A DNA stretch of 64,000 bases, taken from contig NC_042998.1 of NCBI RefSeq assembly GCF_006345805.1, positions 30,194,001 through 30,258,000 of the forward strand. The letters are read 5' to 3'. The notes below the pieces were generated by a model. The model was not told the DNA's origin and searched no databases. It saw only the letters and a program-made list of their open reading frames with translations. Positions 1,500 through 24,308 of the stretch are shown here, in pieces. The stretch comes from Octopus sinensis (Eukaryota). How positions within the stretch are numbered: the first letter of the stretch is position 1; every line of letters starts with the position of its first letter. The translations under genes and the position numbers were made by a program.

Positions 1500-2345
1500 T
1501 ATATTTAACGGTTTAAGTCTTTCATTGTTTTTGTTTTCATGTATGAGAGTCCATCAATAGTTATCAACCCTGTCACAGAGAACATCGGCTTTTGCTTCCA
1601 TTTTGGATTAGACGATGGAAGTTTACGTGATCTTTCATGCTTTAATTCGAAATGTAGACGAACAACGATGTTTCATGTGAAAGGCTTGATAATTGTTGAG
1701 GGACTTCCTTAACATGAAACTAATGGTAGTCTTAACCTATTTATATATTAATATCTTCTGAATTGTATGAAAAAATACTAGAAGCAGCACCTCCAAGGAG
1801 TAAGCTTCTGTTAGACTGAATGTTAGCATCATGACGAACCATTTCAAATATTCTACGAAATGTTTCACTGTTACGGTAAAGGATTTCTTTGAAATCTAGC
1901 AGCTGCAAAATCTTAACAACTGTAGACCGCTCTATACACATGATCTGCAAGCACAAATTTTTAACAGGACTTTGATTGGAGATAAGAAATGGATTCTTCA
2001 CAAGTCTGTTAACTGCAAGAAACAACACCTAAGCTCAAATCATAAACCTTTATTACATCCTCAGCTTCAGGAACATCCTACCTGTCTGCTGTGGCATGAA
2101 TTTAGTAAAAGTCACTAAGCTTATCGGAGTGTTTTGGTGTTGTAACATTTGCAGACTGCTTTGAATGTGTAGAAGTAGAGGGATGTTGATACTGGTACCG
2201 TTGAAGTGGTTGCCGTTTTAAGGGATTGGTATGCTATTCTTTGTACTGCAGAGTTGTTCTTCATGGTTGGTTACACATGCGATTGGCCTTAGCTGGCCTT
2301 TAAGATTCAACGCTCAGACACATACACGCATACACACACACACAC
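1500..2345 (-). repeat. Old decayed repeat family, copy 2
   Basis: 2060-2345 aligns in reverse with 10880-11170 (e.g. ctaaattcatgccacagcagacaggtaggatgttcctgaagctgag vs ctaaattcaggccacgacagacagagaggatgttcttgaagccgag). Frames contain many stops. Confidence 0.6.
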
Positions 2346-2348
2346 ACA

Positions 2349-2386
<38 letters not shown>

Positions 2387-2421
2387 TGTGTGTGTGTGTG
2401 AATGTATGTGCACATGTATGT

Positions 2422-2703
2422 AAATGAAGTGGTTTGTGGTGTTTATTCCACTAGAATTTCTGAGCAAACCTCTTGAGGTTTGAACCAATGTAAATATAGT
2501 TTACCTGTTACTGACCTACTGGAGATCTGAAACTTACGAGTCTATCCCTCACAGAAGTAACTGAAAAATATTAAAAAATTAAATACTTATTTGAAGAAAC
2601 TCAGTAGTAAAAGAAATTGGTGGGTCATGTATTTTTGTTATGTCTTTAAAAAAACAAATTCCATCCTTATACTGCAGTATTTCATTGAATAACAGCATTG
2701 CAA
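2422..2703 (-). repeat. 282-bp inverted duplication, right copy, directly abutting the PLE 5' junction
   Basis: Reverse complement of 688-969. Homology ends at 2703, where the PLE frame begins. Confidence 0.97.
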
Positions 2704-3972
2704 AAATCTAGAAAGGAACCTCCATTTAAAAAAGAATTACAATTACTTGAAGATAGTATATGGAAGGTGGTAAAAAATATTGAATTCCATAAATACCCAA
2801 ATAGAAATAATGAATATTTAAGGAATTTATCAATTAAAATTAAAGATATGAGAAATATGGATGGTATTATAGTACAATCTGATAAAACAAGGAACTTATA
2901 TAAATTAGATGTTAAATTATATGATAAACTATTAGGGAAAGAAATAATTAAAAAATATAAAATTGTTCCAGATGATATTCTTTATAATATTAATAAGGCC
3001 TCTAAAGTAGTAATGTTAAAATATGAGTTGGATAATAAAACTGAACCTTATGTACCTTTGCACCCCAGAATTACTCTTAAAGACCATAAAGATAATTTTT
3101 ATTCAGACCCTAAAGTTAGATTAATTTGCCCATGTAAATCGGATCTAGGTAAATTAAGTAAATTTATTTTAGATAAATATATTGATAAGTTAAATAAACT
3201 TAATTATTTAAAATTATGGTTTAGTAATAATAATACTTTGAAATGGTTTAATAATATTAAAGATAAAAATTGTTATAAATTTATTCAAATAGATATAGAT
3301 AATTATTATTCTTCTATTAATGAAATTGTGTTTAATAAAGCGCTTATTTTCGCAATGAATAAAGCGGGTATGTCACGGGAAGAAGTTAATGTAATTAAAA
3401 TGGCTAAGAAATCGCTAATTAAATATAAAAATAAATTATGGGCTAGGAATGATACTAGAGATTGTTTTGATATACCTATGGGAGCACCAGATTCTGTACA
3501 GGCTACTGATTTAGTAGGTATTTTTCTTTTATCTGAAATCCAATTAGAAAATCTTAAGATAGAGGGTGGTTTATATAGAGACGATCTTCTACTAGTTACA
3601 AAGAATTGTACTAATAGGAATCTACAAGTATATAAGAAAAAACTATATAGTTTCTTTAAAAGATATGGTTTAAGTATTACTATATATAAGGAGAATTATA
3701 ATGTTAATTATTTAGATGTTAATTTTAATCTTATTACAGGTAAAACACAACCATATCATAAACTTAATGAGAACCTTAGATATATAAATGTTAATAGTAA
3801 TCACCCATTTTCTATTAAAAAATCGTTGATTAATAATATAAGTAAACGTATTTCATTACTCTCTTATGATATAGAGATTTTTAATAAACATGCTAATTAT
3901 TATAATGAGGCCCTTAGAGGGGCAGGTTATAATAGGAATATTAATTTTATAATATTAGTGATAAAGATTTAA
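2698..3972 (+). CDS. PLE reverse transcriptase (5'-truncated; the frame shifts near 3945-3948)
   Basis: PLE RT motifs SDKTRNLY, ITLKDHK, RLICPCKSDLGKLSK, FIQIDIDNYYSSI (A), FDIPMGAPDS (B'), GLYRDD (C), NYLDVNF (E) and thumb YINVNSNHP. The TTG 'start' at 2698 lies in the inverted duplication and is not a real start. Confidence 0.95.
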   Translation: MQKSRKEPPFKKELQLLEDSIWKVVKNIEFHKYPNRNNEYLRNLSIKIKDMRNMDGIIVQSDKTRNLYKLDVKLYDKLLGKEIIKKYKIVPDDILYNINKASKVVMLKYELDNKTEPYVPLHPRITLKDHKDNFYSDPKVRLICPCKSDLGKLSKFILDKYIDKLNKLNYLKLWFSNNNTLKWFNNIKDKNCYKFIQIDIDNYYSSINEIVFNKALIFAMNKAGMSREEVNVIKMAKKSLIKYKNKLWARNDTRDCFDIPMGAPDSVQATDLVGIFLLSEIQLENLKIEGGLYRDDLLLVTKNCTNRNLQVYKKKLYSFFKRYGLSITIYKENYNVNYLDVNFNLITGKTQPYHKLNENLRYINVNSNHPFSIKKSLINNISKRISLLSYDIEIFNKHANYYNEALRGAGYNRNINFIILVIKI

Positions 3973-4964
3973 TTGTTAATTTTCGAGATACTTCTAATAA
4001 TAATTATAATTTTGTTAGGTTTAGTGGTAAAAATAATAGATATTATAAAAAAAATAATAAAAATGATAAAAATATAAATAAGAATAATAATAATAATAAT
4101 AAATATAATAATAATAATATAAATAAGAATAATATAAATAAAAATAAATTTAATAATTATTATAATAATTATATTGATAAATTTAATAATATTAATAATT
4201 CCTTAAATGCTGTACATAGATATAATTCTGATAATAATTTTAATAAAATAAAGAATTATAAATATATTTATAATAATGATAATAATAATAAGGTTAATAA
4301 GAATAAAATTTGGTTAATAGTTCCTTATGGAGATCAAGTAAAAACGAATATTATTAAAGAGATTTTAGATGTTATAGAACTATTTATTAGAGATAATCGT
4401 AAATATAGAAACATTTTCTCTTTTAATAATTTTGGAGTTGGTTACTCTACCACTAATAATGTTGGTAACATTATTTCTTCATTTAATAAATATAAACTGA
4501 ATAATTTTTATAAAAAGAAATTATTTGATAATAATATTAATAATGATAAGACTTATATTAATTGTACATGTAGAGATAAATCTAATTGTATTTTAAATAA
4601 TAATTGTGATATTAACGATGTAGTGTATAAATGTATAGTTACATTACATGATAATAACTTTAAGAATAATAATTACAAAAAAGCGGTTTATATAGGTTCT
4701 ACTTCCTCAAAAATAAAACTAAGAATCGCACAACATATGAATTCTTTTAAAAATAAAAACTTAATCAACTCAACCGGACTTAGTAAGTACATTTGGAGTC
4801 TTAAATCACTAAATATTAATTATAGTTTAATTTGGGAAATAATTTGTAAAACTAAATCATATACTATAGGAGCTAATTGTTGTTATTTATGCTCTAATGA
4901 GTTTAAAGAAATTTTATTTTATAAGTATGATAATTACTTAATACTGGTGAAGAGCGCAAAATAA
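3945..4964 (+). CDS. PLE ORF continuation: Asn-rich insert, linker, Cys motif and GIY-YIG endonuclease
   Basis: Translated codon by codon with no stop from 3945 to 4961. Contains IWLIVPYGDQVKTNI, YSTTNNVGNII, CTCRDKSNC...C, VVYK...VYIGST...KLRIAQH...TGLSKYIWSLK...WEII...CYLC. Confidence 0.93.
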   Translation, partial: FYNISDKDLIVNFRDTSNNNYNFVRFSGKNNRYYKKNNKNDKNINKNNNNNNKYNNNNINKNNINKNKFNNYYNNYIDKFNNINNSLNAVHRYNSDNNFNKIKNYKYIYNNDNNNKVNKNKIWLIVPYGDQVKTNIIKEILDVIELFIRDNRKYRNIFSFNNFGVGYSTTNNVGNIISSFNKYKLNNFYKKKLFDNNINNDKTYINCTCRDKSNCILNNNCDINDVVYKCIVTLHDNNFKNNNYKKAVYIGSTSSKIKLRIAQHMNSFKNKNLINSTGLSKYIWSLKSLNINYSLIWEIICKTKSYTIGANCCYLCSNEFKEILFYKYDNYLILVKSAK

Positions 4965-5014
4965 AATGCAGACATAAGTTACTTTACCTATATAATAAGT
5001 TTCATGATAAATAG
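4940..5014 (+). CDS. PLE ORF C-terminal tail after a second 1-nt frameshift
   Basis: The shifted frame reads NTGEERKIKCRHKLLYLYNKFHDK*, restoring the terminal KCRH motif typical of this endonuclease type. Confidence 0.8.
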   Translation, partial: NTGEERKIKCRHKLLYLYNKFHDK

Positions 5015-5309
5015 CAATAATAGTTCCCTTTTAGGTTACTTTAGTTTAGTTTAAATTAGTTTAGATAATATATTTTTGGTTATGTTGTCTAGGCTTTAAT
5101 TATAGTTAGTCTTTATTTATATTTCTTTGTTTTAATTAGTTCATTTTTAATGTATATATTTTGGAGGATATATTTATATGTTTATGGGTGTTATTTAGTG
5201 GTGTTTTTATTGAGTTTTGTATGTATGTGTGAATGTTTAAGATCCCTTTGTTTTTTGTTTTTTATTTGGTATGTTGAATTGACAGATTTTATTGGGTATT
5301 GTCTGTTAT

Positions 5310-6110
5310 AATAAAGTACACACACCCATAACAAATATAAGTGCCCACTTCATTCGATGTACCTGGAATTGCATGTGAGCCTCGGCATATACACCTAACG
5401 GCCACTCCCGCCCCACATGGATAAATAAACACATACATCCCCAAAAATGGGCGTAATCCCATTCACACCAATTATATGTATACAATTATACACACTAGAA
5501 TAATACATAACTAACCCAAATATACAGAACATACTAAAAATCACCAACTAACCACCATCACAAATGAAACCCACACCCATACAATGACAAAATTCCCCCC
5601 TCCATACCCAATTTACACCCACATAGTAATCCCAATATATTCATCCATATATGGACGTAAGTGCGTGAAGCACATGCACACAATTAATACGTACAACCCC
5701 CTAATACACACTTATATACATACGTATTAAGCTCGACATCCACAGTGATATGATTACACCCACTCACACCCAGATGGGTGAATTGCACAACCAGGGAACG
5801 CACACACACACGTGTGCGTTTTTTGATTGTGCAATTCGCCCATATGCATGTATGCGGGCGCGATTACATTGTTGCATATATCGAGCCCAAATAGCATGCA
5901 TATGTACATGTGAGGGGTACATGCAAATGACGTGCGCGTGTACCCCCTGCATTTATACCCGTGCGTGAATATACACATGGAGACTACCACACAGGTACAG
6001 ATGTGTATAGTAATGGGAGCCCCATCACTACACTCAATGTATACTCTCACCCATCCGCACGGATGTGTAAGTGTATCTCCGGTGTATATGTTGAGGTTTA
6101 TATGTAGCGT
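5310..6110 (+). ncRNA. Putative long fold-back RNA structure in the PLE 3' region
   Basis: Apex stem 5774-5805:5812-5843 (27 Watson-Crick, 4 G.U, 1 mismatch). Outer stem 5370-5395:6081-6106 (20 Watson-Crick, 6 G.U, no mismatch). Confidence 0.75.
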
Positions 6111-6164
6111 TGTGGAGGCGAATGTCGTTGAAATTGTGAATGAATGGGTGGAGTTGGGAATTGT

Positions 6165-9100
6165 AACCGGGTGGTGGACTAGCGTTGCTTGGAATTGTGA
6201 ATTGATTAGTGGGGTAGTGAGGTAGGCATCGGGAATAGGTTTGGGTTGCTGTAAGTTGTTTGTTAGAGCTGCTAAGGTGAGCTAAAGCTCATAAATATAT
6301 ATAATGATTTTTCATGGTAGTTTTTTAAAGAATCCATTCATTATAAATTTTTTTAAGTAGTGTTGGTTTGCTACGTGGATATAGTTTTTAGTTCCATTTA
6401 TTCTATTTCTCCATTCATAATTTAAATGACGTTTAATTTCTATGGCGCGTATTCTTTTTTTACATAAGTTATTTCTATGGTAACGTAATTTTGGTTTGGT
6501 TTTTTTAACGGCTAAGAATTTAATTTCACTTTATTATTTGAAATTGACTTGTAGTATGTATTTTATTTATCCTTATGTCATATTGTTATTTTTGATATTA
6601 TGGTTAATTACGATGTATTTAATGTTGTTTTTATAGGAGTGTTTATGTATATGAGATTGTGTGTGAGTTTTTAGTTGTATAATTATATTTATCTGTATGA
6701 GTGTGTGTGTGATATTGTGTGTATATATCGAGTTTAGTGAGTATGTATATGCGTATATGTGAGGGAGTATATGTATCTGTTGTGTGTGTGTGTTTTTTTT
6801 GTGTGTGTGTGTGTGTTTGTGTGTGAATGTGTATATGGGTTTGTTATTTAGGTTTTGGGATGTATGTGTTAATTTGTCTGTGTGGGGAGGGAGTGGGTTT
6901 TGGTGTATATTGAGGTTTATAAATTAGGATAGGTATGTGTATAAGTCGTGGGTCTGTGGTTTACGAGTGTGTATTTGTGTGTGAATGTTTAGGTTTAGGG
7001 GGATTACTATATAGGTTTGTTATAGAGTTTAGCAAAGGGAGATTTTATCGTTATATGTTTTTATGAGTTTTGGTTTATCATGGTTATTTTAGGGAATTCG
7101 TGGTAATTTGTCTATTTTCGATTTTGGTTGTTTTATTACATTGTTTCATTCATAATTTTTGAGTGGTGTTCGTTTTGCCACGTGTATAACCGGGTGGTGG
7201 ACTAGCGTTGCTTGGAATTGTGAATGGAATAGTGTAGTAGTGAGGTAGGCATAGAGAATGGGTTTGGGTTACTGCAAGTTGTTTGTTAGAGCTGCTAAGG
7301 TGAGCTAAAGCTCATAGATGTATATAATGAGTTTTCATGGTAGTTTTTTAAAGAATCCATTCATAATAAATTTTTTTAAGTAGTGTTGGTTTGCCACGTG
7401 GATATAGTTTTTAGTTCCATTTTTCTATTTCTCCATTCATAATTTAAATGACGTTTACTTTCCATGGCGCGTATTCTTTTTTTACATAAGTTATTTCTAT
7501 GGTAACGTAATTTTGGTTTGATTTTTTTAACGGCTAAGAATTTAATTTCACTTCATAATTTGACACTGAATTGTAAGTATGTATTTTATTTATCCTTATG
7601 TCATATTGTTATTTTTGATATTCTGGTTAATTACGATGTATTTAATGTTGTTTTCATAGGAGTGTTTATGTATATGAGATTGTGTGCGAGTTTTTAGTTG
7701 TATAATTTATTTATCTGTATGAGTGTGGGTGTGTAAATATTGTTGTATATATCGAGTTTAGTGAGTATGTATATGCGTATGTGAGGGAGTATATGTATCT
7801 GTTGTTGTGTGTGTGTGTTTTGCGTGTGTGTGTGTTTTGGTGTGAATGTGTATATGAGTTTATTATTTAGGTTTTGGGATGTATGTGTTAATTTGTCTGT
7901 GTGGGGGAGAGTGGTTTTTGGTGTATATTGAGGTTTATAAGTTAGTATAGGTATGTGTATAAGTCGTGGGTCTGTGGTTTACGAGTGTGTATTTGTGTGT
8001 GAATGTTTAGGTTAGGGAGATTGTTATATAGGTTTGTTATAGAGTTTAGCAAAGGGAGATTTATCGTTATATGTTTTTAGGAGTTTTGGTTTATCATGTT
8101 TTTTTTTTAGGGAATTCGTGGTAATTTGTCTATTTTCGATGTTGGTTTTTTTATTACATTGTTTCATTCATTCATAATTTTTGAGTGGTGTTCGTTTTGC
8201 CACGTGAATAACCGGGAGGTGGACTAGCGTTGTTTGGAATTGTGAATGGAATAGTGTAGTAGTGAGGTAGGCATAGAGAATGGGTTTGGGTTACTGCAAG
8301 TTGTTTGTTAGAGCTGATAAGGTGAGCTAAAGCTAATAGATGTAATAATATGATTTCATGGTAGTTTTTTAAGAATCCATTCATAATAAATTTTTTTTAA
8401 GTAGTGTTGGTTTGCCACGTGATATAGTTTTTAGTTCCATTTATTCTATTTCTCCATTCATAATTTAAATGACGTTTACTTTCCATGGCGCGTATTCTTT
8501 TTTTACATAAGTTATTTCTATGGTAACGTAATTTTGGTTTGATTTTTTTAACGGCTAAGAATTTAATTTCACTTCATAATTTGACACTGAATTGTAAGTA
8601 TGTATTTTATTTATCCTTATGTCATATTGTTATTTTTGATATTATGGTTAATTACGATGTATTTAATGTTGTTTTCATAGGAGTGTTTATGTATATGAGA
8701 TTGTGTGCGAGTTTTTAGTTGTATAATTTATTTATCTGTATGAGTGTGGGTGTGTAAATATGTTGTATATATCGAGTTTAGTGAGTATGTATATGCGTAT
8801 ATGTGAGGGAGTATATGTATCTGTTGTGTGTGTGTGTTTTGCGTGTGTGTGTGTTTGTGTGTGAATGTGTATATGGGTTTGTTATTTAGGTTTTGGGATG
8901 TATGTGTTAATTTGTCTGTGTGGGAGGGAGTGGGTTTTGGTGTATATGGAGGTTTATAAGTTAGTATAGGTATGTGTATAAGTCGTGGGTCTGTGGTTTA
9001 CGTGTGTGTTTGTGTGTGAATGTTTAGGTTAGGGGGATTACTATATAGGTTTGTTATAGAGTTTAGCAAAGGGAGATTTTATCGTTATATGTTTTTTAAG

Positions 9101-9224
9101 AGTTTTGGTTTATCATGGTTTTTTTTTAGGGATTTCGTAGTAATTTGTCTATTTTCGATGTTGGTTGTTTTTTACATTGTTTCATTCATAATGTTTTGAG
9201 TGGTGTTCGTTTTGCCACGTGAAT
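6165..9224 (+). repeat. Three tandem ~1.02-kb G/T-rich repeats
   Basis: Units start with aaccggg at 6165, 7188 and 8210 (1023, 1022 and ~1015 bp). The + strand is strongly C-depleted. Confidence 0.97.
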
Positions 9225-9990
9225 TTTATTTTTAATTCCATTTATTCCATTTCTCTCCATTCATTAATTTAGAGATGTTCGTTTCCAGAGCGGTTATACT
9301 TTTTATACATATGTTAAGTTCCTTGGTAAAGTAATTTTGTTTGGTGTATATGTTGAGGCTTATATGTACTTGTGGATGTGTGTGAGTGGGGTGGGTTTTG
9401 TATTAGTTATGGGTGTGTGGTTTACGTGTGGTTTTGTGTGTGAATGTATAGGTTAAAGGAATTGCTATATAAGTATGTTTAGTGTTTTTAGTAAAGGGAG
9501 GTTTTATCATTTCTGTTTTGTGAGTTTTAGCTTATCATGGTAGTTTTAAAAAGAATCCATTCATAATTTTTGTGTTTATTTGTCTGTGTGGGGTTGAGTG
9601 GGTTTTTGGAGTATATGTTGAGGTTTATATGTATGTATTGGTATGTGTAAGTGGTGTGGGTATTTGTATATGTCGTGGGTGTGTGGTTTACGTGTGTGTA
9701 TTTTGTGTGTGAATGTTTAGGTTAGGGGGATTGCTATATAGGTTTGTTATAGAGTTTAGTAAAGGGAGATTTTATCATTATATGTTTTTATGAGTTTTGG
9801 TTTATCATAGTAGGTTTGATAAGGAATTCGTAGTAATTTGTGTCTATTTGCGATGTCTGTTGTTTTATTGCATTGTTTCATTCATAATTTTTAAGTAGTG
9901 TTCGTTTTACCAAGTGAATATCATTTTTAATTCCATTTATTCCATTTCTCCGTTCATAGTTTTGAGTGATGTCCGTTTTCTAGAGTGTGA
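9225..9990 (+). repeat. More diverged sub-unit copies of the tandem repeat
   Basis: Recurrent modules gtctgtgtggg, ggtgtatatgttgagg, gtgtgaatgtttaggtt, aagggagattttatc and ttcataattttt. Confidence 0.85.
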
Positions 9991-10418
9991 ATGTGGGTTG
10001 TATGTGTGTGTGTGTGGGAGTATGAATAAGTATTGTGTTGAAGTATTTAGCTATTTTATTTATTTATAGTTGCCTAGACATTTTATGTGTATGTATAGGG
10101 ATATATATATAGGTGTGTGATTTAGTGTATGTAGTTAGATATGGTGATATATAATTAGGTATATGTGTATGGGTGTATATATAGTTTATTATTATATTAT
10201 TATTATTTTTTTTTGTTTTGTTTTATATTTTATATTTTATATTTTATATTTAATTGTTGATAGGTTTTTTTAGTTTATATATTGTTTATATATTGATTAT
10301 ATATGGATTATAGATGGGTTATATATGGATTATATACTTATATTTTTTCATTCATACTTTAATTATTTTAAAATTATTATTTTTATATTTTAAAATATTG
10401 ATTTTTTAGATTGGAAGT

Positions 10419-10461
10419 CCACCTGAAGATTGTCGATCAAGACAAGAAACGATTGTAGTGG
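10419..10461 (+). ncRNA. Minimal type I hammerhead ribozyme (PLE-type)
   Basis: ccac-CUGAAGA-uuguc(gaucaa)gacaa-GAAA-c(gauu)g-UA-gugg. Intact core, 5-bp stem II, 4-bp stem I, predicted cleavage after GUA at 10457. Confidence 0.88.
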
Positions 10462-10479
10462 CGGTTTTTTTTACTATTT

Positions 10480-10632
10480 ATTAAAATTTTATGTATTGAT
10501 TAAGTCTTTCCTTGTTTGTTTTGCAAAATAGTGGTTTTGTCTCTAATAATATTTTATAATATTTTACTATAAAATCGATTTAATACTAAATCTGATGTTT
10601 TCCCTGTAAATTTGGATTTATTCCCTAATATT
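10480..10632 (+). repeat. PLE 3' terminus / pseudo-LTR segment
   Basis: Aligns with 20955-21107(-). Both copies end at TA repeats. Confidence 0.85.
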
Positions 10633-10879
10633 TATTATTATTATATATATATGTATATATATATATATATGTGTGTGTGTATATATGTATGCGTAGATAT
10701 ATTTGTATTTGGGTATATGTGTGTGAATACATATATTTACATCTATGGGTATGAGTGTATCGGTATTCGTCTGCATGTAAGTAGATATACATACATATGT
10801 GTATGTATATATATATATATATGTATACGTGTGCGTATGTATGTATGTGTGTATGAATGTATATATATGTATGTGTGTG

Positions 10880-11500
10880 CGTATGCATGTGTATGCGTGT
10901 GTGTCCGAGCGTTGAATCTTAAAAGTCAGCTAACGACAACCGCATGTGTAAAGAAGTATGAAAACTTCAGAAGTTGATAGAAATAAAGTACCAATTCCTT
11001 TAAAAGGATAACCACTTTAGCAGTACCAGAATCACCATTCCACCTCATCTACACATTCAGATCAGTCTGACAACGTCCCTCAGTGGCAAAACACCCTGAT
11101 AAGATCAGTGATGACTACTAAATTCAGGCCACGACAGACAGAGAGGATGTTCTTGAAGCCGAGAATTTTAAACTGACAGAGACAATATTTACATATCGCT
11201 TGAGCAAACACAACTAGGTCTGATAATGCAGGAAAACGGTGGCATAATCGAGTAACAGCACACATAGAGAACTACGTTGTTTCGAAACAATTGTAGTGAT
11301 TAAAAAATAAGTGTCCAACCGTACCCCTTCCTGCTGACTCCAGTTTTTTTCCATTATGTATTCACACATGACAGATGCCCAAATGCAAACCTTATACAAA
11401 GTCCGTATAATTCTACTATTTGATAGTGCAGGGTAAATCTGAGAGTGGACGAGCCTTATGCTGCATTCTACTACGTTCTTAACAGAATACACCATAACTA
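10880..11500 (+). repeat. Old decayed repeat family, copy 3
   Basis: Diverged homology to 2060-2345(-) and patchy homology to ~600-800(+). Confidence 0.55.
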
Positions 11501-11520
11501 TATGTGTGTGTGTGTGTGTG

Positions 11521-11712
11521 TGTCTCCCATTACTGCTTGACAACCGGTGCTGGTGTGTTTACGTACTCGTAATTCATCAGTTCAACAAAAGAGACATATA
11601 GAAAAGTAGGAGGCTTAAAAAATAATTCATAGTATCCAGTCGGTCGACTAAAACGCTTCAAGACGGTGCTCCAGCATAGCCACAGTCAATTGACTGAAAC
11701 GAGTAAAAGAAT
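11521..11712 (+). mobile_element. SINE family B, 3' half
   Basis: cttgacaaccggtgctggtgtgtttacg ... ggtgctccagcatagccacagtcaattgactgaaac. Confidence 0.85.
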
Positions 11713-12305
11713 ATACATACAAATACATATATGTATGTATGTCAGGTCACTTTCGAGCGCTACTGGTAACATGTAACGCAGTACAACCTGTTGCATGGTC
11801 GGGTCGTCGGCGACTAAACCCGCAACTCCACCAAGTTTGCTTGGTGAGGAGGGTATTTATTGGACACCCTGCGGTATGAAAAACAAAACCCGTCAAAGGG
11901 CGGAGGAACTCTTGAGAGTCAACAGCCATCCAATAAATGTCTTAAGGTTGTATCATGCGCGGGAACATAGAAATAATCGGATTGAATACCCGATCGTGCG
12001 GTTAAACCATTGGGAGTGGAGGACTCCTACCCTTTGTTAGGGTATCCTTCTAGGAGAAGGTAACTCAGGTAACTGGGATAACTCCGACATAAAACCTGCG
12101 GCTCACTGGTTACCGATGATGTTGACTTGTTCTTCTTTCCGGATTATGGCTGTTGTTGCTTAGTGAGTAGGATTGACTCAGTGCACAGCCTTTCCTCATT
12201 AAAAAAAAATCTTCTTGCACAGGCATTGCACGATAACAACATTGATTAATATTCATGCAATAGCCATACTCGACAACGAGGGAGCAGCCACCATGTATGT
12301 ACGTA

Positions 12306-12363
<58 letters not shown>

Positions 12364-12368
12364 TATGT

Positions 12369-12402
<34 letters not shown>

Positions 12403-14419
12403 CCATCCCAGAGTAGTTCTAAAGAATGAAAGTCTAAGGATTTGATGTCCTATGAAAATCGTAACATTGGAGCAACCAAAGTAATGAGCCCAGTTGAAAA
12501 TTATTTCCATATTCCGAATATGCTTAATCGTCTGGGAGATATAATAATGCATAACAATGCGGCAGTGCTAGCGTGTTTCAAACACAACCGAAAAACATTT
12601 AGCTTCACTTTATTACCATAGAATATGTTTACCATCATTGAAATATGCTGCCAGTCTAATAATGATTTTGCAATTTCCATTTTAGTTCAAAGAAAAAAAA
12701 GACATATAAAGTTGCACTGATATCAGGGTACATAATAGGTTTCATCTTTTGTATTTCTTCGTCAGCTTTATGGGAAATTTTGGGAGATTGCTTAATATCC
12801 AAGCTTGACGTTTATAGAACATTGACTGCTCTTCAACATAGAAAATACTGAAGATGGTCTGTGACTATATACACACTTAAACAAAGCCTGGTGTGACAGT
12901 AAGCTCTATAAGAAGCAAGGATCTTGTCAGTAGCTTTAGCAAACTACCTGAAGTGGTTTCTCGTACAACAACTTGAAATGGATTGAATATCAAATATCCG
13001 AGACATGTACGGTGGTTAAATAATATATTTAATATGAATACTGGCGTATGTCGCAAATAGAAGACTGAGCAGTAAATGCCATTGTTGCCAAATGTCAGAA
13101 AGACACTTTCGAAACTAGAAGGAAACAACAACACTTGTTCCAAGCAAACACTACAAGCTGAAGTGTATCACTAGACACAAGTCTGCGTCCAATATTACAT
13201 TACTGTTGACGGAAGAGCTAGACAGTCATTATTGGAGAAAAAAATAGATCTGTAGACCGGTTCATGTCCTTCAAAACTGCTTCAGCGGATGGCAGACAGG
13301 TAGCAGTATATTATACATTCCTGAGACACCATCAATAACTGATGAATAAGTAAACGGACGGAGGAGAGAAAGAACACACGAAAAGAATAAAGCGCTAAGA
13401 ATATCAAAGAAAAAAATTAAACATGAAAGTAAATCTTCAAGAACGTAATAGGAAATTAAATAAATGACAAAAGTAAAAGAATAAACCACACGCAAAGTAA
13501 ATGATAGAGTAGAAAAAAAATTAAAGGAGAGAGAATATATATATAAAATATGAGAAGAAAAAACATTAGGAGGGAAGCGAATAAATAAAGTCAAAATCTT
13601 AAATGTACAGCATTCGAAAATTTGAATGATGCACGAGAGGTAATTTAATATACATAAAATGTAGAAATACAGAGGGATATGTATAGAGCATAGGTGACTG
13701 CAAACTAAGTAGAAATCGCCTACGTTAGAAGGTCAGGAATAAATATATATGAAAGTCTTTTCTTTAGACGTGCTGTGTTCAAATCACAATTATCTTTCCA
13801 TTTTAACATTTTTTTTTCTTCAGAATTCTGTTGCACAAGTCCCCTGCACATCGTTTCGGAAACAATTACTCTTAATCCTGTCACCGTCAACGCTTTCTCT
13901 CATTGCATCTTCAGAATAGATACACAAGTATACACAGACGAACGCGCAGAGCGTGCAGGCAAACGCAAATACACATAAACACTTAAACGCATACACATAT
14001 ATATGTATATATGCACATGTGTGTACATACATTTACATGTGTGTGTGTGTGTGTATTTCTGTGTAATTATGTATTTATGTATGTATAACCTTTTCACGAA
14101 CGTTATTGACAGTTATTGAACAGAAATTATCAATATACAAATGTTTCAGCTAAACAAATGTTTCAGAATCTGGCAAACATTGATGAATTAATGATATATG
14201 GGTGTTCGGTAAGAACATTTATTTTCTTTGCATCTATGTATTGTCTCAGAATGGATTTTTGTTTTTAGAAATTTCCAAACAGACGTCTTGTTCCCCAAAT
14301 ACATTTTTAATTCGTACTTTCTTTGTCAAACAAATCGGGAAGTTATAAACACATAAATAAATTGTCGCTTAATAAAGTAGTTTAGTCCTGTGACAGTTAC
14401 GTCTGTAAATATAAGAAAT

Positions 14420-14675
14420 GACGCAGGAGTGGCTTTGCGGTAAGTAATTTGCTCACCAGCCACCTGGTTCCGGGTTCAGTCCCACTGCTGGCACCTTGGG
14501 TAAGTGTCTTCTACTATAGTCTCGGGCCGACCAAAGCCTTGTGAGTAGATTTGGTAGACGGAAACTGAAAGAAGCCCGTCGTATATATATATATATTCAT
14601 ATATATATATAAGAGAGAGAGAGAGAGAGAGAGAAGAAGCCCGTCGTATATATATATTCATATATATATGAGATA

Positions 14676-14757
<82 letters not shown>

Positions 14758-14975
14758 TGTGTGTGTGTGTGTGTCTATGTATATGCTTGCGTATCTGTGT
14801 TTTTTGTCCCCCCAATCGCTTGACAACCGATGTGGTTTGTTTACGTCTCCGTCACTTAGCGGTTCGGCAAGAGAAACCGATACAATAAGTACTAGGCTTA
14901 TAAAGAATAAGACTTGGGGGTCGACTTGCTCCAATGAAGGCGGTGCTCCAGCATGGCTACAGTCAAATAAAAGAA
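14420..14975 (+). mobile_element. SINE family B, full length with internal microsatellite
   Basis: tRNA-like head gcaggagtggct...ggttccgggttcagtccc, body ccttgggtaagtgtc, internal TA/GA/TG repeats and shared 3' tail. Confidence 0.9.
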
Positions 14976-15344
14976 TAAATGGATAAATGTCAGATATTTT
15001 CGGTGGAATGAGATAGGAAAAATACATCCATTCGAGACATAAACGGCCAAAAATGATTTCAGTTCTCCTAAATAAATGATATTGAAAATTTTATAGAAAC
15101 ACACATCTACATACATGCTCGTATATATACACATACATATATATTTATGTATGCGTATATATGTGTGTGTATAAATAGGATAAAATCTATATAAGAATTT
15201 ATCAAGTAGGCAGCGTGAAAAACCTGATAGGGAAAAAATATTAATTATTCCCTTTAAATATATTTATTCATAGTAAGGGCATCTATGTATAGTAATACCC
15301 CTATATATATATATAAATAAATATATATATATATATATATGTGA

Positions 15345-15502
15345 ACTCCTTTCAGTTTCAATCTAACAAATGCATTCACGTACCCTTGGTCGGCCCGAGG
15401 CTATACTAGAAGTTACCTACCCAGAGTGTCACGCGATGATGATGGAACCCTGAAGCATGTGGTTGGAAAACAAGCTTCTTACTACACAGCTACATCAGCG
15501 CC
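15345..15502 (-). mobile_element. SINE family B, degenerate 5' half
   Basis: ttggtcggcccgaggctata ... catgtggttgg on the + strand. Confidence 0.75.
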
Positions 15503-15544
15503 TATAAAGCCATGGCTGTTCATACATATGTATATATACGCACG

Positions 15545-15730
15545 CGTCGAGCTACCAGAATCATTAGTACGCCGGACGAAATGTGTAGCCGTATTTCGTC
15601 TGCCGCTACGTTCTGGGTTCAATTGGATAAGTACCAGTTACGCACTGGTGTCGATATAATCGACTTAATGGTTTTGTCTATCCTTGTTTGTCCCCTCTAT
15701 GTTTACCCCCTGTAGACAATAAAGAAATAT
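15545..15730 (+). mobile_element. SINE family C, internally deleted
   Basis: gagctaccagaatcattagtacgccggacgaaatg ... aagtaccagttacgcactgg ... aataaagaaat. Confidence 0.85.
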
Positions 15731-17259: not shown

Positions 17260-17276
17260 TTATATATATATATATA

Positions 17277-17684
17277 CTCTTTACTCTTTTACTTGTTTCA
17301 GTAATTTGACTGCGGCCATGCTGGAGCACCGCCTTTTGTCGAGCAAATCGACCCCGGGACTTATTCTTTGTAAGCCCAGTACTTATTCTATCGGTCTCTT
17401 TTGCCGAACCGCTAAGTGCCGGGGACGTAAACACACCAGCATCGGTTGTCAAACAATGCTAGGGGGACAAACACAGATACACAAACACACACACATACAT
17501 ATATATATATATACATATATACGATAGGCTTCTTTCAGTTTCCGTCTACCAATTCCACTCACAAGGCATTGGTCGGCCCGGGGCTATAGCAGAAGACACT
17601 TACCCAAGATGCCACGCAGTGGGACTGAACCCGGAACCATGTGGCTGGTTAGCAAGCTACTTACCACTCAGCCACTCCTGCGCT
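17277..17684 (-). mobile_element. SINE family B, full length
   Basis: Reverse-complement match to the other B copies over both halves. Confidence 0.92.
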
Positions 17685-18328: not shown

Positions 18329-18386
18329 TACATATATGTTATTAATATATATACCTGTGCGTGTACATAAATTTATATATACATAC

Positions 18387-18449
<63 letters not shown>

Positions 18450-18452
<3 letters not shown>

Positions 18453-19030
18453 TCACCCACCAGTGTAAAATTAACAGCAGACCTTGAAGCAATCCAGAGA
18501 AGATTCACAAAGAAGATCCTCTCTTTGCAACAGCTCAGCTACTGGGAAAGGTTGAAACAGCTAAGACTCTACTCCCTAGAGAGAAGACGGGAGAGGTATG
18601 CAGTAATATATATCTGGAAGATCCTGGAAGGAATTGTGCCAAATTTTGGCATTGTAAGCTACACCAATGCTAGAACGGGACGACACTGTATAGTGCCAAA
18701 GATCCCAGCAATGCCATCACGCTTTAGGACCAGCTTCTGCAACAGCCTGGGTTTCAAGGGCCCACAGCTCTTTAATATTCTCCCAAAGAGTCTGGGGAAC
18801 TTGCACAAAGTAGATGTAGCAGTTTTTAAATCAAAGCTGGACATCCTCCTGTCGAGAGTCCCAGATGAACCTACCTCACGGCAAGAGGTGCAAATGAGAA
18901 TAGCTATGTCAAAGTCCATTCTTCACCAAGTGCCACATATTAGAGGAGATTCTTCGTAATAACAGTGTAGCACAAAACGGCGGTGCATCAGCATGGCCGC
19001 AGCTCTGAGCTGAAACAAGCAAAAAAAAAA
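18450..19030 (+). mobile_element. CR1-like LINE 3' fragment
   Basis: WSP...[12 protein letters not shown]...[20 protein letters not shown]...GPQLFNILP...FKSKLD...PDEP. Begins directly after (TA)n. Confidence 0.9.
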
Positions 19031-19866: not shown

Positions 19867-20399
19867 TATGACACATTCACCGAAAACGCCACCGTAAATA
19901 AAACTGAAAAGCGTACTGGTCGAATGACACATATGTCCATAGATAATGGTACAAAAATAGCTTCATGGGAATAGCACAATGCCGAATGTTTTTTTTGTTG
20001 TTTTTTTTACTTATTCAAAATAAAACAGTTTTCAAAAAAATATACTTTTGTTATTCTCTGTTTGGGTATATGCGGCTGTCAGTTATGTATATCTTCCAAC
20101 AGGTATCTGATAGAAAATAAAAATTCCATTACTATCTTTGTTGTATTAGCAATACGAAAGCTTTCCAACACACGCACAAAAACAGACTGTTTTAGACATT
20201 ACTACATGTGGGGTGCTTACAACTAATTTAATGTGTATTATAGCAGACTATTATTTGTTTTTATATATTTCACCTTTTTTCCCTAGTACCAGGTTTAAAA
20301 TTTGACGAATGCTACGACTGTGACTCCGGCTCATATGTATATTACACAAACACACACAAACACATACACCCCCTACACACACAAATACACACACATATA

Positions 20400-20845: not shown

Positions 20846-20954
20846 ATATACGTCTAGACAAAATGTTTTGAATGAATGTAACGAAAGTAACACACATACA
20901 CATATGGAAAGGGAGGGATATTGTTATAGATTAAGTTATATATATATATATATA

Positions 20955-21243
20955 TAATAATATTAGGGAATAAATCCAAATTTACAGGGAAAAATTAGAT
21001 TTAGGACTGAATCCAATTTTATAGTAAAATATTATATAATATTAATTAGAGACAAAACCACTATTATGCAAATCAAACAAAGAAAGACTTAATCCAATAC
21101 ATAAAAATGTTTATATAAATTAAATAAAATTAAATTTTATTTTATTTTATTTTATTTTATTTATATAAAATTTTTTATGTATTGGATTAAGTCTTTCTTT
21201 GTTTGATTTGCATAATAGTGGTTTTGTCTCTAATTAATATTAT
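20955..21243. mobile_element. Solo PLE terminus in inverted (fold-back) arrangement
   Basis: 20955-21107(-) matches 10480-10632. 21036-21107 and 21172-21243 form a perfect 72-bp inverted repeat. Confidence 0.88.
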
Positions 21244-24065: not shown

Positions 24066-24104
<39 letters not shown>

Positions 24105-24144
24105 TGTATATATATATATATATATATTATATATGCATGTATAT

Positions 24145-24181
<37 letters not shown>

Positions 24182-24275: not shown

Positions 24276-24308
<33 letters not shown>

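What the first reader, a model, noticed from the sequence alone, without database searches (positions are those of the whole stretch)
2704..10632. Penelope-like element with a ~5.4-kb structured, tandemly repeated 3' region between ORF and hammerhead
In canonical EN+ PLEs the hammerhead-bearing pseudo-LTR lies at or near the ORF end. Here the stop (5014) and the hammerhead (10419) are separated by a C/A-rich arm, a fold-back, three 1-kb G/T-rich repeats and a C-free tract. No SINE, TSD or other insertion scar interrupts this stretch, although the rest of the window is littered with them. The simplest reading is a young, unusually large PLE carrying a multi-kb structured RNA module. This is the best candidate for an undescribed system in the window. 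The RT/EN motifs most resemble the C-terminal-EN Hydra-type PLEs (inference).
Basis: partly seen in the sequence, partly recalled or inferred. Interest (0 to 1): 0.88.

Follow-up and report, generated by a model that had tools for sequence, protein, structure and literature searches.

The report
Octopod Penelope-like retroelement with repeat-swollen tail
This is a decaying copy of a known kind of jumping gene (a Hydra-clade Penelope-like retroelement) in an octopus-type genome. Its non-coding tail holds about 5 kb of fold-back and tandem-repeat DNA. That is an unusual size, but nothing shows it is a new functional system.

Summary
The coding part (about 2555-5014, + strand) is a Hydra-clade Penelope-like element (PLE). 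Its RT model matches telomerase RT best, it carries the DKT, CxCX5C, CxxC and CxH motifs, and it sits in a (TA)n target. A minimal hammerhead lies 170 nt from a 3' end that recurs in the window. The RT groups with Octopus and Argonauta copies, and the window's SINEs are octopod.

The stop-to-hammerhead distance is 5.4 kb. In cephalopod relatives the 3' region is 0.65-1.2 kb. The extra DNA is non-coding:
- an inverted arm (5311-5808);
- a palindrome centre with a very stable hairpin;
- three 1,022-bp units, 94-96% identical to each other;
- rearranged older units.

The fold-back and sub-repeats are far more diverged than the nearly stop-free ORF allows. They therefore did not arise in place after insertion.

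My best reading (about 0.5) is a long-3'UTR PLE lineage that carried this satellite-like block in its RNA. The main rival (about 0.27) is a nested foreign repeat block. The copy is not clearly "young": it has three frame changes and a degenerate N-terminus. Only the palindrome shows strong predicted structure. Sister copies from the host genome could not be reached, so the decisive test remains undone.

The parts
2040..2315 (+). Host repeat copy A (about 280 bp), left flank. It is not part of the element.
   Evidence: It is 75% identical to the reverse complement of 10907-11166. No other copy exists in the window or in loci L003, L006 or L007.
2315..2420 (.). (CA)n(TA)n(TG)n palindromic microsatellite that includes (AT)16 at 2352-2383. 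This is the upstream side of the (TA)n target.
   Evidence: repeat I24. The sub-threshold Rfam miRNA-like hits here are microsatellite artefacts.
2555..2690 (+). Degenerate N-terminal coding region of the PLE ORF, in a different frame and with in-frame stops. The 5' end of the element lies somewhere in 2430-2555.
   Evidence: There is a weak tblastn match of relatives' N-terminus (LKNIKKLNTYLKKLSSKRNWW against LKNIP…KRMRWKAFF, E 0.13-2.7). Stops are visible.
2701..3969 (+). Reverse transcriptase part of the ORF (423 codons, no stop). It holds the motifs SDKTRN and GLYRDD.
   Evidence: It gives E 7e-87 to 1e-105 against roughly 700-aa relatives. The AF2 model has pLDDT 91.8, and the top PDB matches are TERT (3du5_A, E 1.3e-10).
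3945..4310 (+). Frame change (about 3950) followed by an N-rich low-complexity linker built on (AAT)n-like repeats.
   Evidence: The closest relatives (P0202, P0168, P0126, P0121) also have a 100-170-aa low-complexity linker between RT and EN.
4311..4930 (+). CxCX5C linker (CTCRDKSNC) and GIY-YIG endonuclease (VVYKC…VYIGST…R…H…CYLC…E).
   Evidence: It aligns to P0002 residues 489-678 at E 5e-26. Invariant family columns are C85 C87 C93 C99 Y106 Y127 G129 R138 H142 C191 C194 E197. The top PDB fold match is T4 EndoII, but only at E 0.35.
4934..5014 (+). Last ORF segment after a further frame change. It contains the CxH motif (KCRH), and the stop is at 5012-5014.
5015..5310 (+). T-rich, C-poor proximal 3' UTR.
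   Evidence: Composition is given. It has no similarity to the repeat unit at nhmmer E<=10.
5311..5808 (-). C/A-rich arm. It is a diverged inverted copy of unit positions about 490-800.
   Evidence: nhmmer gives E 6e-12 and 3e-8. blastn gives 82.5 bits against 36±4 for block shuffles. There is no hit elsewhere in the window. Local 80-91% complementary segments are listed.
5774..5843 (+). Hairpin at the palindrome centre.
   Evidence: Free energy is -50.4 kcal/mol, z = -9.5, and 0 of 200 shuffles fold as well.
5808..6163 (+). Right arm, a diverged and C-richer partial unit ("unit 0", unit positions about 497-669 plus remnants).
   Evidence: nhmmer E 3e-12. It is 72% identical to the unit consensus, and 21 of 36 mismatches are unit T against arm C.
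6164..9224 (+). Three tandem units of about 1,022 bp. Each ends in a ~290-nt sub-repeat (S), and the second half of each unit is G/T-rich and microsatellite-like.
   Evidence: The GT half matches host TG/TA microsatellites.
9229..9982 (+). Older, rearranged partial units covering unit positions 222-336, 731-932, 697-1019 and 188-279.
   Evidence: They are 80-91% identical to the unit consensus.
9983..10418 (+). TG/TA microsatellite-like stretch followed by a nearly C-free AT/T-rich simple-repeat tract (10181-10418).
   Evidence: An equivalent AT-rich tract precedes the tail in the Argonauta relative (L003 12672-12790).
10419..10461 (+). Minimal type I hammerhead ribozyme motif. The predicted cleavage site is after A10457.
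   Evidence: It shares the string GAAACGATTGTAGT with the hammerhead of relative L002. Rfam and the single-sequence MFE fold do not recover it.
10462..10632 (+). 3' tail of the element family. It ends …GGATTTATTCCCTAATATT and abuts (TA)n.
   Evidence: The same tail ends at (TA)n in a second, 5'-truncated copy at 21129-20937, which is 86% identical.
10633..10910 (.). (TA)n/(TG)n microsatellite, the downstream side of the target. It runs into host repeat copy B (10915-11180, - strand).
20937..21241 (.). Second locus of the same family. Two 5'-truncated tail fragments lie head to head (21129-20937 on the - strand, 21150-21241 on the + strand) next to (TA)n.

Best explanation
The stretch from about 2430 to 10632 is one copy of a Hydra-clade Penelope-like retroelement from an octopod genome.

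**How such elements work (family knowledge, not tested here).** The GIY-YIG endonuclease nicks a (TA)n microsatellite. The telomerase-related RT then copies the element RNA from its 3' tail by target-primed reverse transcription. The minimal hammerhead, 170 nt from the 3' end, is the usual PLE ribozyme and is thought to process multimeric or read-through transcripts.

**What is unusual.** About 4.9 kb of non-coding DNA (5311-10180) lies between the proximal 3' UTR and the AT-rich tract, hammerhead and tail. It consists of a snap-back-type inverted arm, a palindrome centre, and a tandem array with old rearranged edges and three young 1-kb units.

**Inference.** This block was already part of the RNA, or of the template set, that was reverse-transcribed when this copy was made. 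That makes it a long-3'UTR lineage of the element carrying satellite-like, microsatellite-derived DNA. The last threefold amplification came from unequal exchange or template jumping, either before or after insertion. The block is most likely a passenger without a function of its own. The copy is now decaying.
For: **PLE and Hydra-clade identity**
- RT homologs score E up to 1e-105.
- The RT model has pLDDT 91.8, and TERT structures are the best matches.
- The DKT, CxCX5C, CxxC and CxH motifs are present, and no conserved CCHH is seen. These are the features given for the clade in PMC8557442 section 11.
- (TA)n lies at both ends.
- The hammerhead is expected 0.005 times per window by chance.
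- The tail recurs and ends at (TA)n.
- The RT groups with O. bimaculoides, O. sinensis and Argonauta copies with support 99/93 and 99/98. Window SINEs are 83-90% identical to Octopus loci.

**One unit rather than a composite**
- The whole stretch lies between the two halves of a single microsatellite target, which is flanked by two tail-to-tail host repeats.
- No TSD or termini appear at the block edges.
- No SINE or other dispersed repeat lies inside.
- The extra DNA is confined to the UTR.
- C depletion of the sense strand runs through the ORF, UTR, block and tail. A relative's 3' region is also C-poor and G-rich with internal (TG)n and (TA)n (L009, GC skew up to 0.68).

**The block pre-dates this copy**
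- The arms are only 63% identical, and the S sub-repeats are 80% identical to the unit consensus.
- Equal decay would have put 13-24 stops into the 2.2-kb stop-free ORF. The 2% per-lineage divergence of the three units alone predicts 2.6-3.4 stops, giving P(0) of 0.03-0.08.

**Long PLEs in octopus**
- In O. vulgaris, 336 recently active near-full-length PLE insertions cover 1,829,278 bp, a mean of 5.4 kb (PMC13282606).

**Snap-back structures in this family**
- Head-to-head inverted pieces at the 5' end of PLE copies are seen in the second locus of the window and in Argonauta.
Against: - No second copy of the ORF or of the 1-kb unit exists in the window, and none could be reached elsewhere. 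Linkage of the block and the PLE therefore rests on one locus.
- Cephalopod relatives have short 3' regions: about 650 bp in L003 and about 1.17 kb in L009. L003 has the same layout as the window once 5311-10180 is removed (proximal UTR, AT tract, hammerhead tail). A nested insertion would produce exactly that picture.
- The proximal UTR and the tail show no homology to the block.
- The "diverged edges, homogeneous centre" pattern is typical of an array evolving in place.
- The inverted arm would have to be part of the template RNA or be made by snap-back at insertion. In the latter case the ORF part would lie upstream of the 5' end of that cDNA, which needs a template switch to explain.
Confidence: 0.5

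Rival explanations
1. Nested insertion. An ordinary ~3.4-kb Hydra-type PLE inserted into the (TA)n. Later an unrelated non-coding repeat block was inserted at the junction between its proximal 3' UTR and its internal TG/TA and AT-rich tract. The block could be a satellite-bearing or fold-back-type transposon, or filler DNA from repair.
For: - Removing 5311-10180 leaves the same 3' architecture and a similar length (about 0.8 kb) as the Argonauta relative.
- The block has its own inverted and tandem architecture and much older internal divergence than the ORF.
- It shares no sequence with the UTR or the tail.
- AT and TA tracts are preferred targets for elements of this kind (PMC8557442).
- Octopus genomes are about 66% repeats, with 15% unknown repeats and 3% satellite.
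Against: - No TSD, terminal inverted repeats or Helitron-like ends appear at the block boundaries.
- No other copy of any part of the block occurs in 64 kb, while SINEs recur at least 10 times.
- The block has the same sense-strand C depletion as the surrounding PLE.
- A nested insertion would have had to hit the 0.8-kb UTR rather than the 2.5-kb ORF of a copy that is itself little decayed.
Confidence: 0.27
2. Two independent PLE fragments flank a resident host satellite or minisatellite. One is an ORF-bearing copy that lost its 3' end. The other is a short 5'-truncated tail copy, like the one at 20937-21129.
For: - Short 5'-truncated tail copies exist in the window.
- The GT-rich half of the units resembles host TG/TA microsatellites.
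- The array has diverged edges and a homogeneous centre, as arrays evolving in place do.
Against: - It needs a 3'-truncated ORF copy, which target-primed reverse transcription does not produce.
- It also needs two fragments in the same orientation that together make exactly one complete element.
- The whole lies within one microsatellite target between two tail-to-tail host repeats.
Confidence: 0.08
3. The 5.4-kb region is a functional, structured RNA module of the element, needed for example for RNA processing, packaging, priming or regulation. That would make this an undescribed kind of PLE system.
For: - The hairpin at 5774-5843 has z = -9.5, and the 990-nt fold-back has z = -5.8.
- G·U pairs in the hairpin keep + strand pairing.
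- No insertion scars were found.
Against: - The structure signal comes from an inverted duplication, which any palindrome gives.
- The 1-kb unit has z = -2.65, with 1 of 20 shuffles folding as well.
- No Rfam family matches.
- There is no conservation or covariation, because no homolog of the block exists in any relative.
- Relatives transpose with 0.65-1.2-kb 3' regions.
- The three units differ by ordinary substitutions and indels.
Confidence: 0.07
4. Assembly artefact. A false join or a mis-expanded repeat placed a satellite between two parts of a PLE.
For: - The three apparent frame changes are each consistent with a 1-bp deletion in A/T-rich sequence, as long-read assemblies produce.
- An O. 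bimaculoides relative has assembly gaps just downstream of its PLE copy (L006).
Against: - The units differ at 61 singleton positions and by indels. The array has ordered, diverged edges. The junctions are unique sequence.
- Nothing else in the window suggests a chimeric join.
Confidence: 0.05

Closest known systems
Hydra clade of C-terminal-EN Penelope-like elements (Craig, Yushenova, Rodriguez & Arkhipova 2021, PMC8557442)
   Same: - A single ORF encodes RT plus a C-terminal GIY-YIG EN.
- DKT replaces DKG, the linker is CxCX5C, there is no CCHH, and CxxC and CxH motifs are present.
- Insertion is into (TA)n.
- A canonical minimal hammerhead is present.
- Mollusca are among the reported host phyla.
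   Different: - Published elements are "generally short (<3 kb)". This copy spans about 8.2 kb, with 5.4 kb between the stop and the hammerhead.
- It has a 100-120-aa N-rich linker between RT and EN, shared with its Octopus and Argonauta relatives.
- This copy has no 5' pseudo-LTR.
Cephalopod copies of the same subclade: Argonauta hians (P0122/L003, P0126/L009), Octopus bimaculoides XP_052826861.1 (L006), Octopus sinensis XP_029653623.1 (L007)
   Same: - RT is 39-57% identical and groups with the window at support 99/93 and 99/98.
- They have a low-complexity linker, (TA)n targets, and head-to-head or pLTR arrangements.
- The 3' region holds AT-rich or TG microsatellite tracts, with a hammerhead-like motif 60-80 nt from the 3' end.
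   Different: - Their 3' regions are 0.65-1.17 kb.
- Outside the ORF there is no DNA similarity, and there is no fold-back or 1-kb tandem array.
Animal (non-LTR) retrozymes, tandem hammerhead-bearing non-autonomous PLE derivatives (bioRxiv 10.64898/2026.07.22.740005; de la Peña and colleagues, from my own knowledge)
   Same: Tandem non-coding repeats associated with a PLE and a type I hammerhead.
   Different: - In a retrozyme each monomer carries a hammerhead, and monomers are a few hundred nt long.
- Here only one hammerhead core exists in 2400-10700, and none lies in the 1,022-bp units.
Terminons / Athena giant PLE-derived elements of bdelloid rotifers (Arkhipova et al. 2017, as cited in PMC8557442)
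   Same: A PLE RT embedded in a much longer unit that also carries hammerheads.
   Different: - Terminons are telomere-associated, lack EN in the RT ORF, carry many extra ORFs and have telomeric repeats.
- Here there are no further ORFs of 80 aa or more with homologs, no telomeric repeats, and the site is internal in a (TA)n.
Transposons carrying internal tandem repeats that seed satellites in molluscs, such as tandem-repeat-containing MITEs and Helentron-type elements of bivalves (Šatović & Plohl 2013, listed; otherwise my own knowledge)
   Same: A mobile element with an internal satellite-like array in a mollusc genome.
   Different: Those are DNA transposons with defined termini and 100-200-bp monomers. 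Here the carrier would be a retroelement and the unit is 1 kb with a 290-nt sub-repeat.

Membership tests
Penelope-like elements (EN+) | Reverse transcriptase of the PLE/telomerase lineage | tested here: met
   - The AF2 model of window 2701-3969 has pLDDT 91.8.
- The top Foldseek PDB matches are TERT (3du5_A E 1.3e-10, then Candida, Tetrahymena and human TERT), followed by DRT2/9 and group II intron RTs.
- The YRDD motif and family-invariant columns appear.
- Sequence profiles (Pfam RVT_1, NCBIfam, PDB by sequence) give nothing.
Penelope-like elements (EN+) | GIY-YIG endonuclease fused to the RT | tested here: inconclusive
   - The motif pattern is conserved: Y106 (GIY), Y127-G129 (YIG), R138, H142 and E197 are invariant in 22 sequences.
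- The piece aligns to relatives at E 5e-26.
- The best fold matches are the GIY-YIG nuclease T4 EndoII (E 0.35, probability 0.72) and Hpy188I at rank 14, which is not significant.
- There is no Pfam hit.
Penelope-like elements (EN+) | Hammerhead ribozyme in the terminal or pseudo-LTR region | tested here: met
   - A complete minimal type I core and helices lie at 10419-10461, 170 nt from the 3' end.
- The motif is expected 0.005 times per 64 kb by chance.
- Rfam covariance models do not report it.
- Self-cleavage itself cannot be tested with these tools.
Penelope-like elements (EN+) | Pseudo-LTRs or tandem/inverted copy arrangements | tested here: not met
   - No copy of the tail or hammerhead lies upstream of the ORF.
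- The family does form such structures elsewhere: a head-to-head pair at 20937-21241, 980-bp pLTRs 98% identical in L009, and a head-to-head pair in L003.
- The feature is common in PLEs but not obligatory for a single copy.
Hydra clade of PLEs | DKT in place of the DKG motif | tested here: met
   The window reads QSDKTRNLY. D61, K62 and T63 are nearly invariant in 30 sequences. The criterion comes from PMC8557442 section 11.
Hydra clade of PLEs | N-terminal RWK motif | tested here: inconclusive
   Relatives carry RWK, RWR or RWM. The window's N-terminus is degenerate and reads …KRNWW… in another frame, matched only at E 0.13.
Hydra clade of PLEs | CxCX5C linker, no CCHH inside the EN, and CxxC and CxH near the conserved E and N | tested here: met
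   - The window has CTCRDKSNC, CYLC and KCRH, the last in a shifted frame.
- The conserved Cys and His columns of the family are C85, C87, C93, C99, C191 and C194, plus a C and an H in the last segment.
- No conserved C or H column lies between GIY and the catalytic E.
Hydra clade of PLEs | Insertion into (TA)n | tested here: met
   (AT)16 lies at 2352-2383 and (TA)14 at 10642-10670. The second tail copy and the Argonauta copies also abut (TA)n.
Hydra clade of PLEs | Short element (generally under 3 kb) | tested here: not met
   The element spans about 8.2 kb (2430-10632), with 5,405 nt between the stop and the hammerhead. The authors call the short length "general" and do not make it defining.
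Hydra clade of PLEs | Phylogenetic placement with the reference Hydra RTs, against Penelope/Poseidon, Neptune, Nematis and Naiad | not tested
   No reference sequences were at hand. The tree holds only database homologs of the same family.
Non-LTR retrozymes | Every tandem monomer carries a hammerhead | tested here: not met
   Only one CUGANGA…GAAA core exists on either strand of 2400-10700, and it lies outside the units.
Terminons / EN- telomeric PLEs | Telomeric repeats at the 3' end, extra ORFs and terminal chromosomal location | tested here: not met
   There is no (TTAGGG)n, only a single TTAGGTTAGG per sub-repeat. No further ORF of 80 aa or more with any family hit was found. The site is an internal (TA)n.
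Independent transposon as the origin of the block 5311-10180 (fold-back, Helitron-type or satellite-bearing) | Defined termini with TSD or TIRs, and other copies | tested here: inconclusive
   - Only chance-level 8-11-nt direct repeats in AT-rich sequence occur at the edges.
- Inverted matches of the left arm fall 300-600 bp inside the right edge, not at it.
- There are no other copies in the window.
- Genome-wide copy number is not testable here.

The most novel reading that the evidence does not exclude
A lineage of octopod Hydra-type PLEs carries a multi-kb fold-back plus tandem array as a regular part of its RNA. Such a lineage would disperse and seed satellite-like arrays. Its copies would also record a sense-strand-specific C-to-T (and A-to-G) substitution bias that follows the orientation of each repeat copy rather than the chromosome strand. 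That pattern would be expected from deamination or editing at the RNA or cDNA stage of retrotransposition.
Probability: 0.2. Interest if true: 0.55.

Novelty: new member of a known kind. Interest (0 to 1): 0.3.

Why it matters
PLEs make up about 7% of octopus genomes (PMC13282606). Their cephalopod lineages are barely described, and NCBI names their ORF fragments "GATA zinc finger domain-containing protein 14-like".

If the 5-kb block does travel with the element, this would be a retroelement that carries and spreads a satellite-like array and a long hairpin. That bears on how satellites originate from transposons in molluscs. It also bears on how much non-coding cargo a PLE RT can copy.

If the block is only a nested repeat, the locus is an ordinary decayed PLE. 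In either case it offers no evidence for a new molecular system.

Tried and rejected
- **Rfam.** Searches at the gathering threshold and at E<=10 found no hammerhead or any other ribozyme. The only hits were microsatellite-hairpin "miRNA" matches below threshold.
- **Sequence profiles.** Pfam, NCBIfam and PDB sequence searches of the ORF pieces and of a family profile found no significant family.
- **Sister copies.**
  - The RT piece found nothing above 59% identity.
  - The EN piece found nothing at all.
  - A 21-mer of the tail gave one chance hit in JGI metagenomes (L008) and none in viral contigs.
  - The cephalopod loci L003, L006, L007 and L009 share no DNA with the block, the UTR or the tail.
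- **Hyper-editing.** I tested whether the G/T-rich block is a hyper-edited copy of the ORF or of other window DNA, using k-mers in collapsed R/Y, A=G and C=T alphabets. Only self-diagonals appeared.
- **Proximal UTR as source of the unit.** One shared 13-mer exists, but nhmmer finds nothing at E<=10. I rejected this idea.
- **Arm similarity as mere microsatellite resemblance.** I rejected this too. The arm has no hit outside the element, and its score is far above shuffles.
- **G-quadruplex and telomeric motifs.** None occur in the block.
- **TSD or TIRs at the block edges.** Nothing convincing was found.
- **In-situ origin of the fold-back after insertion.** The stop-codon expectation rejects it.

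Full report

- The + strand between 2701 and 5014 encodes, in three successive frames, a 423-codon RT piece (2701-3969), an N-rich linker with the endonuclease (3945-4930), and a last segment ending at the stop at 5012-5014.
- A complete minimal type I hammerhead motif lies at 10419-10461 (CCAC CUGAAGA UUGUC-GAUCAA-GACAA GAAA C-GAUU-G UA|GUGG). It is the only such motif in the window. A first-order Markov simulation of the window expects 0.005. Rfam's models do not report it even at E<=10, and the isolated sequence does not fold into the ribozyme by MFE. From my own knowledge, this is usual for the very small PLE hammerheads, which act as dimers.
- The stretch between the stop and the hammerhead contains, in order:
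  - a T-rich proximal UTR (5015-5310);
  - a C/A-rich arm (5311-5808);
  - a palindrome centre with a hairpin of -50.4 kcal/mol and z = -9.5;
  - a diverged partial unit (5808-6163);
  - three 1,022-bp units that are 94-96% identical (6164-9224);
  - rearranged older partial units (9229-9982);
  - a TG/TA microsatellite-like stretch and a nearly C-free AT/T tract (9983-10418).

**What the coding part is.**

- The RT piece finds hundreds of ~700-aa proteins with the same layout, at E down to 1e-105. These proteins have an N-terminal …YSLKNIP…RWK…, then ADKTRN, GLYRDD, WFNPPYS, CNCRxKxxCP, and a GIY-YIG-like end.
- No Pfam, NCBIfam or PDB sequence profile recognises them.
- I therefore tested the fold. 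An AlphaFold2 model of the window's own RT piece has pLDDT 91.8. It matches telomerase catalytic subunits best (3du5_A, E 1.3e-10), ahead of bacterial DRT RTs and group II intron RTs. That is expected for a PLE RT.
- The endonuclease model (pLDDT 80) has the GIY-YIG nuclease T4 EndoII as its top match, but only at E 0.35. The conserved Y…YxG…R…H…E pattern supports the assignment.
- The diagnostic features given for the Hydra clade in PMC8557442 section 11 are met as follows:
  - DKT instead of DKG;
  - a CxCX5C linker;
  - no CCHH, with CxxC and CxH present;
  - insertion into (TA)n;
  - a canonical hammerhead.
- The RWK motif cannot be judged, because the window's N-terminus is degenerate.

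**Host and relatives.**

- In a maximum-likelihood tree of database homologs, the window's RT groups with fragments annotated in Octopus bimaculoides and O. sinensis (54-57% identity) at support 99/93. That group sits within a clade containing Argonauta hians copies at support 99/98.
- SINEs in the window are 83-90% identical to SINEs in Octopus loci. The host is therefore an octopod.

**Ends of the element.**

- The 170 nt after the hammerhead recur at 21129-20937 at 86% identity. Both copies end with …GGATTTATTCCCTAATATT… directly followed by (TA)n. So 10632 is a true 3' terminus of the family.
- The second locus is a head-to-head pair of 5'-truncated fragments.
- Upstream, the element begins shortly after an (AT)16 that lies inside a (CA)n(TA)n(TG)n microsatellite.
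- The two microsatellite halves are the tails of two ~280-bp host repeats lying tail to tail (2040-2315 and 11180-10915, 75% identical). Everything from about 2430 to 10632 therefore sits in one microsatellite target.

**How unusual the 3' region is.**

| Relative | 3' region |
|---|---|
| Argonauta L003 | About 650 bp from the stop to the (TA)n: about 300 bp, an AT-rich TTATATTT/(TA)n tract, then a ~220-bp tail with a hammerhead-like motif |
| Argonauta L009 | About 1.17 kb, lying inside 980-bp pseudo-LTRs that are 98% identical. The region is C-poor and G-rich and contains (TG)13 and (TA)n |
| L001 (metagenomic relative) | The whole contig is 2.4 kb |
| Published Hydra clade | "Generally short (<3 kb)" |
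| Window | 5,405 nt from the stop to the hammerhead, so 5-9 times longer |

- Long PLEs may not be rare in octopus. In O. vulgaris, 336 recently active near-full-length PLE insertions cover 1.83 Mb, a mean of 5.4 kb (PMC13282606).

**Anatomy and history of the extra 4.9 kb.**

- A profile of the three units hits both sides of position about 5810. Unit positions 490-715 match 5812-5581 on the - strand, and positions 497-669 match 5812-5979 on the + strand. The fold-back is therefore a real inverted duplication of part of the unit.
- The arm's similarity to the units scores 82.5 bits, against 36±4 for block shuffles. It has no counterpart elsewhere in the window, so it is not mere microsatellite resemblance.
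- Beyond the central 35 nt the two arms are only 63% identical. The ~290-nt sub-repeats outside the three young units are 80-91% identical to the unit consensus.
- I applied these divergences to the 2.2 kb of stop-free, AT-rich ORF. Equal neutral decay would have created 13-24 stop codons. Even the 2% per-lineage divergence of the three young units predicts 2.6-3.4 stops, giving P(0) of 0.03-0.08.
- The fold-back and the sub-repeat array therefore did not arise in place after this ORF copy was inserted. Either they came with it or they were inserted later as a ready-made block.
- No TSD, terminal inverted repeats or other termini mark the block. No SINE interrupts it.
- The block shares the sense-strand C depletion of the ORF, the UTR and the tail.
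- On the other hand, removing 5311-10180 leaves exactly the 3' layout of the Argonauta relative. The block also has no homology to the UTR or the tail.

**Structure and function.**

- Strong predicted RNA structure is limited to the palindrome: z = -9.5 for the hairpin and -5.8 for 5311-6300. Any inverted duplication gives this.
- A 990-nt unit folds only slightly better than shuffles (z = -2.65).
- The block contains no second hammerhead core, no G-quadruplex motif, no telomeric repeat and no ORF with homologs.
- No relative carries a homologous block, so conservation or covariation cannot be shown.
- I see no evidence for a functional RNA module.

**A compositional observation.**

- Where the C-richer right arm and the units differ, 21 of 36 mismatches are C in the arm against T in the unit, and none go the other way.
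- The reverse complement of the left arm shows the same tendency (19 against 2).
- Among the three young units there are 8 A-to-G singletons and no T-to-C, although T is twice as frequent as A. C-to-T singletons are mostly outside CpG.
- The bias follows the orientation of each repeat copy, not the chromosome strand. This fits a process acting on the element's sense strand (RNA or cDNA stage), or divergent transcription from the palindrome.
- The numbers are small, and I treat this as a lead only.

**State of the copy.**

- The ORF needs three frame changes (about 2680, 3950 and 4930). Each is consistent with a 1-bp loss in A/T-rich sequence, so assembly error cannot be excluded.
- The first 60 or so codons are degenerate with stops.
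- "Young" is therefore only relative.

**Verdict.**

- This is a member of a known family, a Hydra-clade PLE of an octopod subclade, with an exceptionally long, repeat-filled 3' region.
- Best reading (confidence about 0.5): the block was copied together with the element, making this a long-3'UTR lineage carrying satellite-like DNA. The last amplification to three units came from unequal exchange or template jumping.
- Main rival (about 0.27): a nested insertion of an unrelated repeat block into the UTR.
- Minor rivals: two PLE fragments around a host satellite (0.08), a truly functional structured module (0.07), and misassembly (0.05).
- The decisive test is co-occurrence and order of ORF, unit and tail in the host genome. 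It could not be run because no collection available here holds that genome.

Noticed in passing
window 20937-21241: A second insertion of the same PLE family. Two 5'-truncated 3'-tail fragments are joined head to head (- strand 21129-20937, which reaches the 3' end and (TA)n; + strand 21150-21241) with an AT-rich spacer. They are 86-88% identical to 10465-10661.
   Followed up: yes
window 2040-2315 and 10915-11180: Two ~280-bp copies of a host repeat, 75% identical, lie tail to tail with CA/TA/TG microsatellite tails and bracket the whole PLE. No further copy exists in the window or in the Octopus and Argonauta loci fetched.
   Followed up: partly
window 5806-5940 against units; 5311-5812; 6164-9224: There is an orientation-linked substitution bias. 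Unit T against right-arm C is 21:0, and unit T against rc(left arm) C is 19:2. Among the three young units there are 8 A>G singletons and 0 T>C, and C>T changes are mostly outside CpG. This suggests sense-strand C-to-T and A-to-G change tied to each copy's orientation.
   Followed up: partly
window 2322-2407, 10777-10891, 5772-5845: Rfam gives sub-threshold "miRNA precursor" hits (mir-3149, mir-297, mir-1277 and others). They fall on (CA)n(TA)n(TG)n microsatellite palindromes and on the fold-back hairpin. All are far below the gathering scores and are most likely artefacts of simple palindromic repeats.
   Followed up: partly
window 17274-17483, 20628-20831, 61163-61365, 61544-61744, 49959-50122, 23114-23270, 14788-14968 and others: At least 10 copies of a ~210-bp SINE are 83-90% identical to a SINE in O. 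bimaculoides (L006 1949-2158). A second SINE-like repeat matches O. sinensis L007 1080-1490. This identifies the window as octopod.
   Followed up: partly
window 23693-24820, 18336-18959, 25184-25624: These ORF fragments have non-LTR (LINE) reverse-transcriptase motifs (…[11 protein letters not shown]…, …FADDSKL…) and LINE C-terminal regions, interrupted by TA/TG microsatellites. They were not analysed.
   Followed up: no
window 57575-59817, 25728-26147, 45730-46950, 43860-44310: There are kilobase-scale TA/TG/CA and (AAT)n-type microsatellite tracts. The (AAT)n tracts cross-match the N-rich linker of the PLE ORF only through low complexity.
   Followed up: no
L003 (Argonauta hians BAAFZT010000013.1) 6810-13010: Two copies of a related PLE lie head to head (+ 10010-12356, - 9540-7458). 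A hammerhead-like motif occurs three times (9730, 12947, 6867). It has a ~55-nt insertion in helix II and weak helix I pairing, so it is not a canonical hammerhead by my pattern.
   Followed up: partly
L009 (Argonauta hians BAAFZT010000002.1) 8321-13052: This is a textbook pseudo-LTR arrangement of a related PLE. 980-bp repeats, 98% identical, lie on both sides of the ORF and are bounded by (TA)n. The upstream repeat starts at a position that corresponds to an internal (TA)6 of the 3' region. Further PLE fragments lie at 14406-15576 and 20158-21122.
   Followed up: partly
L006 (O. bimaculoides CM046609.1) 12001-12600 and 13801-15600: Assembly gaps (runs of N) lie directly downstream of a related PLE copy, so its 3' region cannot be read.
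   Followed up: no
Proteins P0122, P0168, P0202 (NCBI annotations): PLE ORF fragments of cephalopods are named "GATA zinc finger domain-containing protein 14-like" or "putative uncharacterized protein DDB_G0282133" in NCBI annotation. The cause is probably their N-rich low-complexity linker. These names are misleading.
   Followed up: partly
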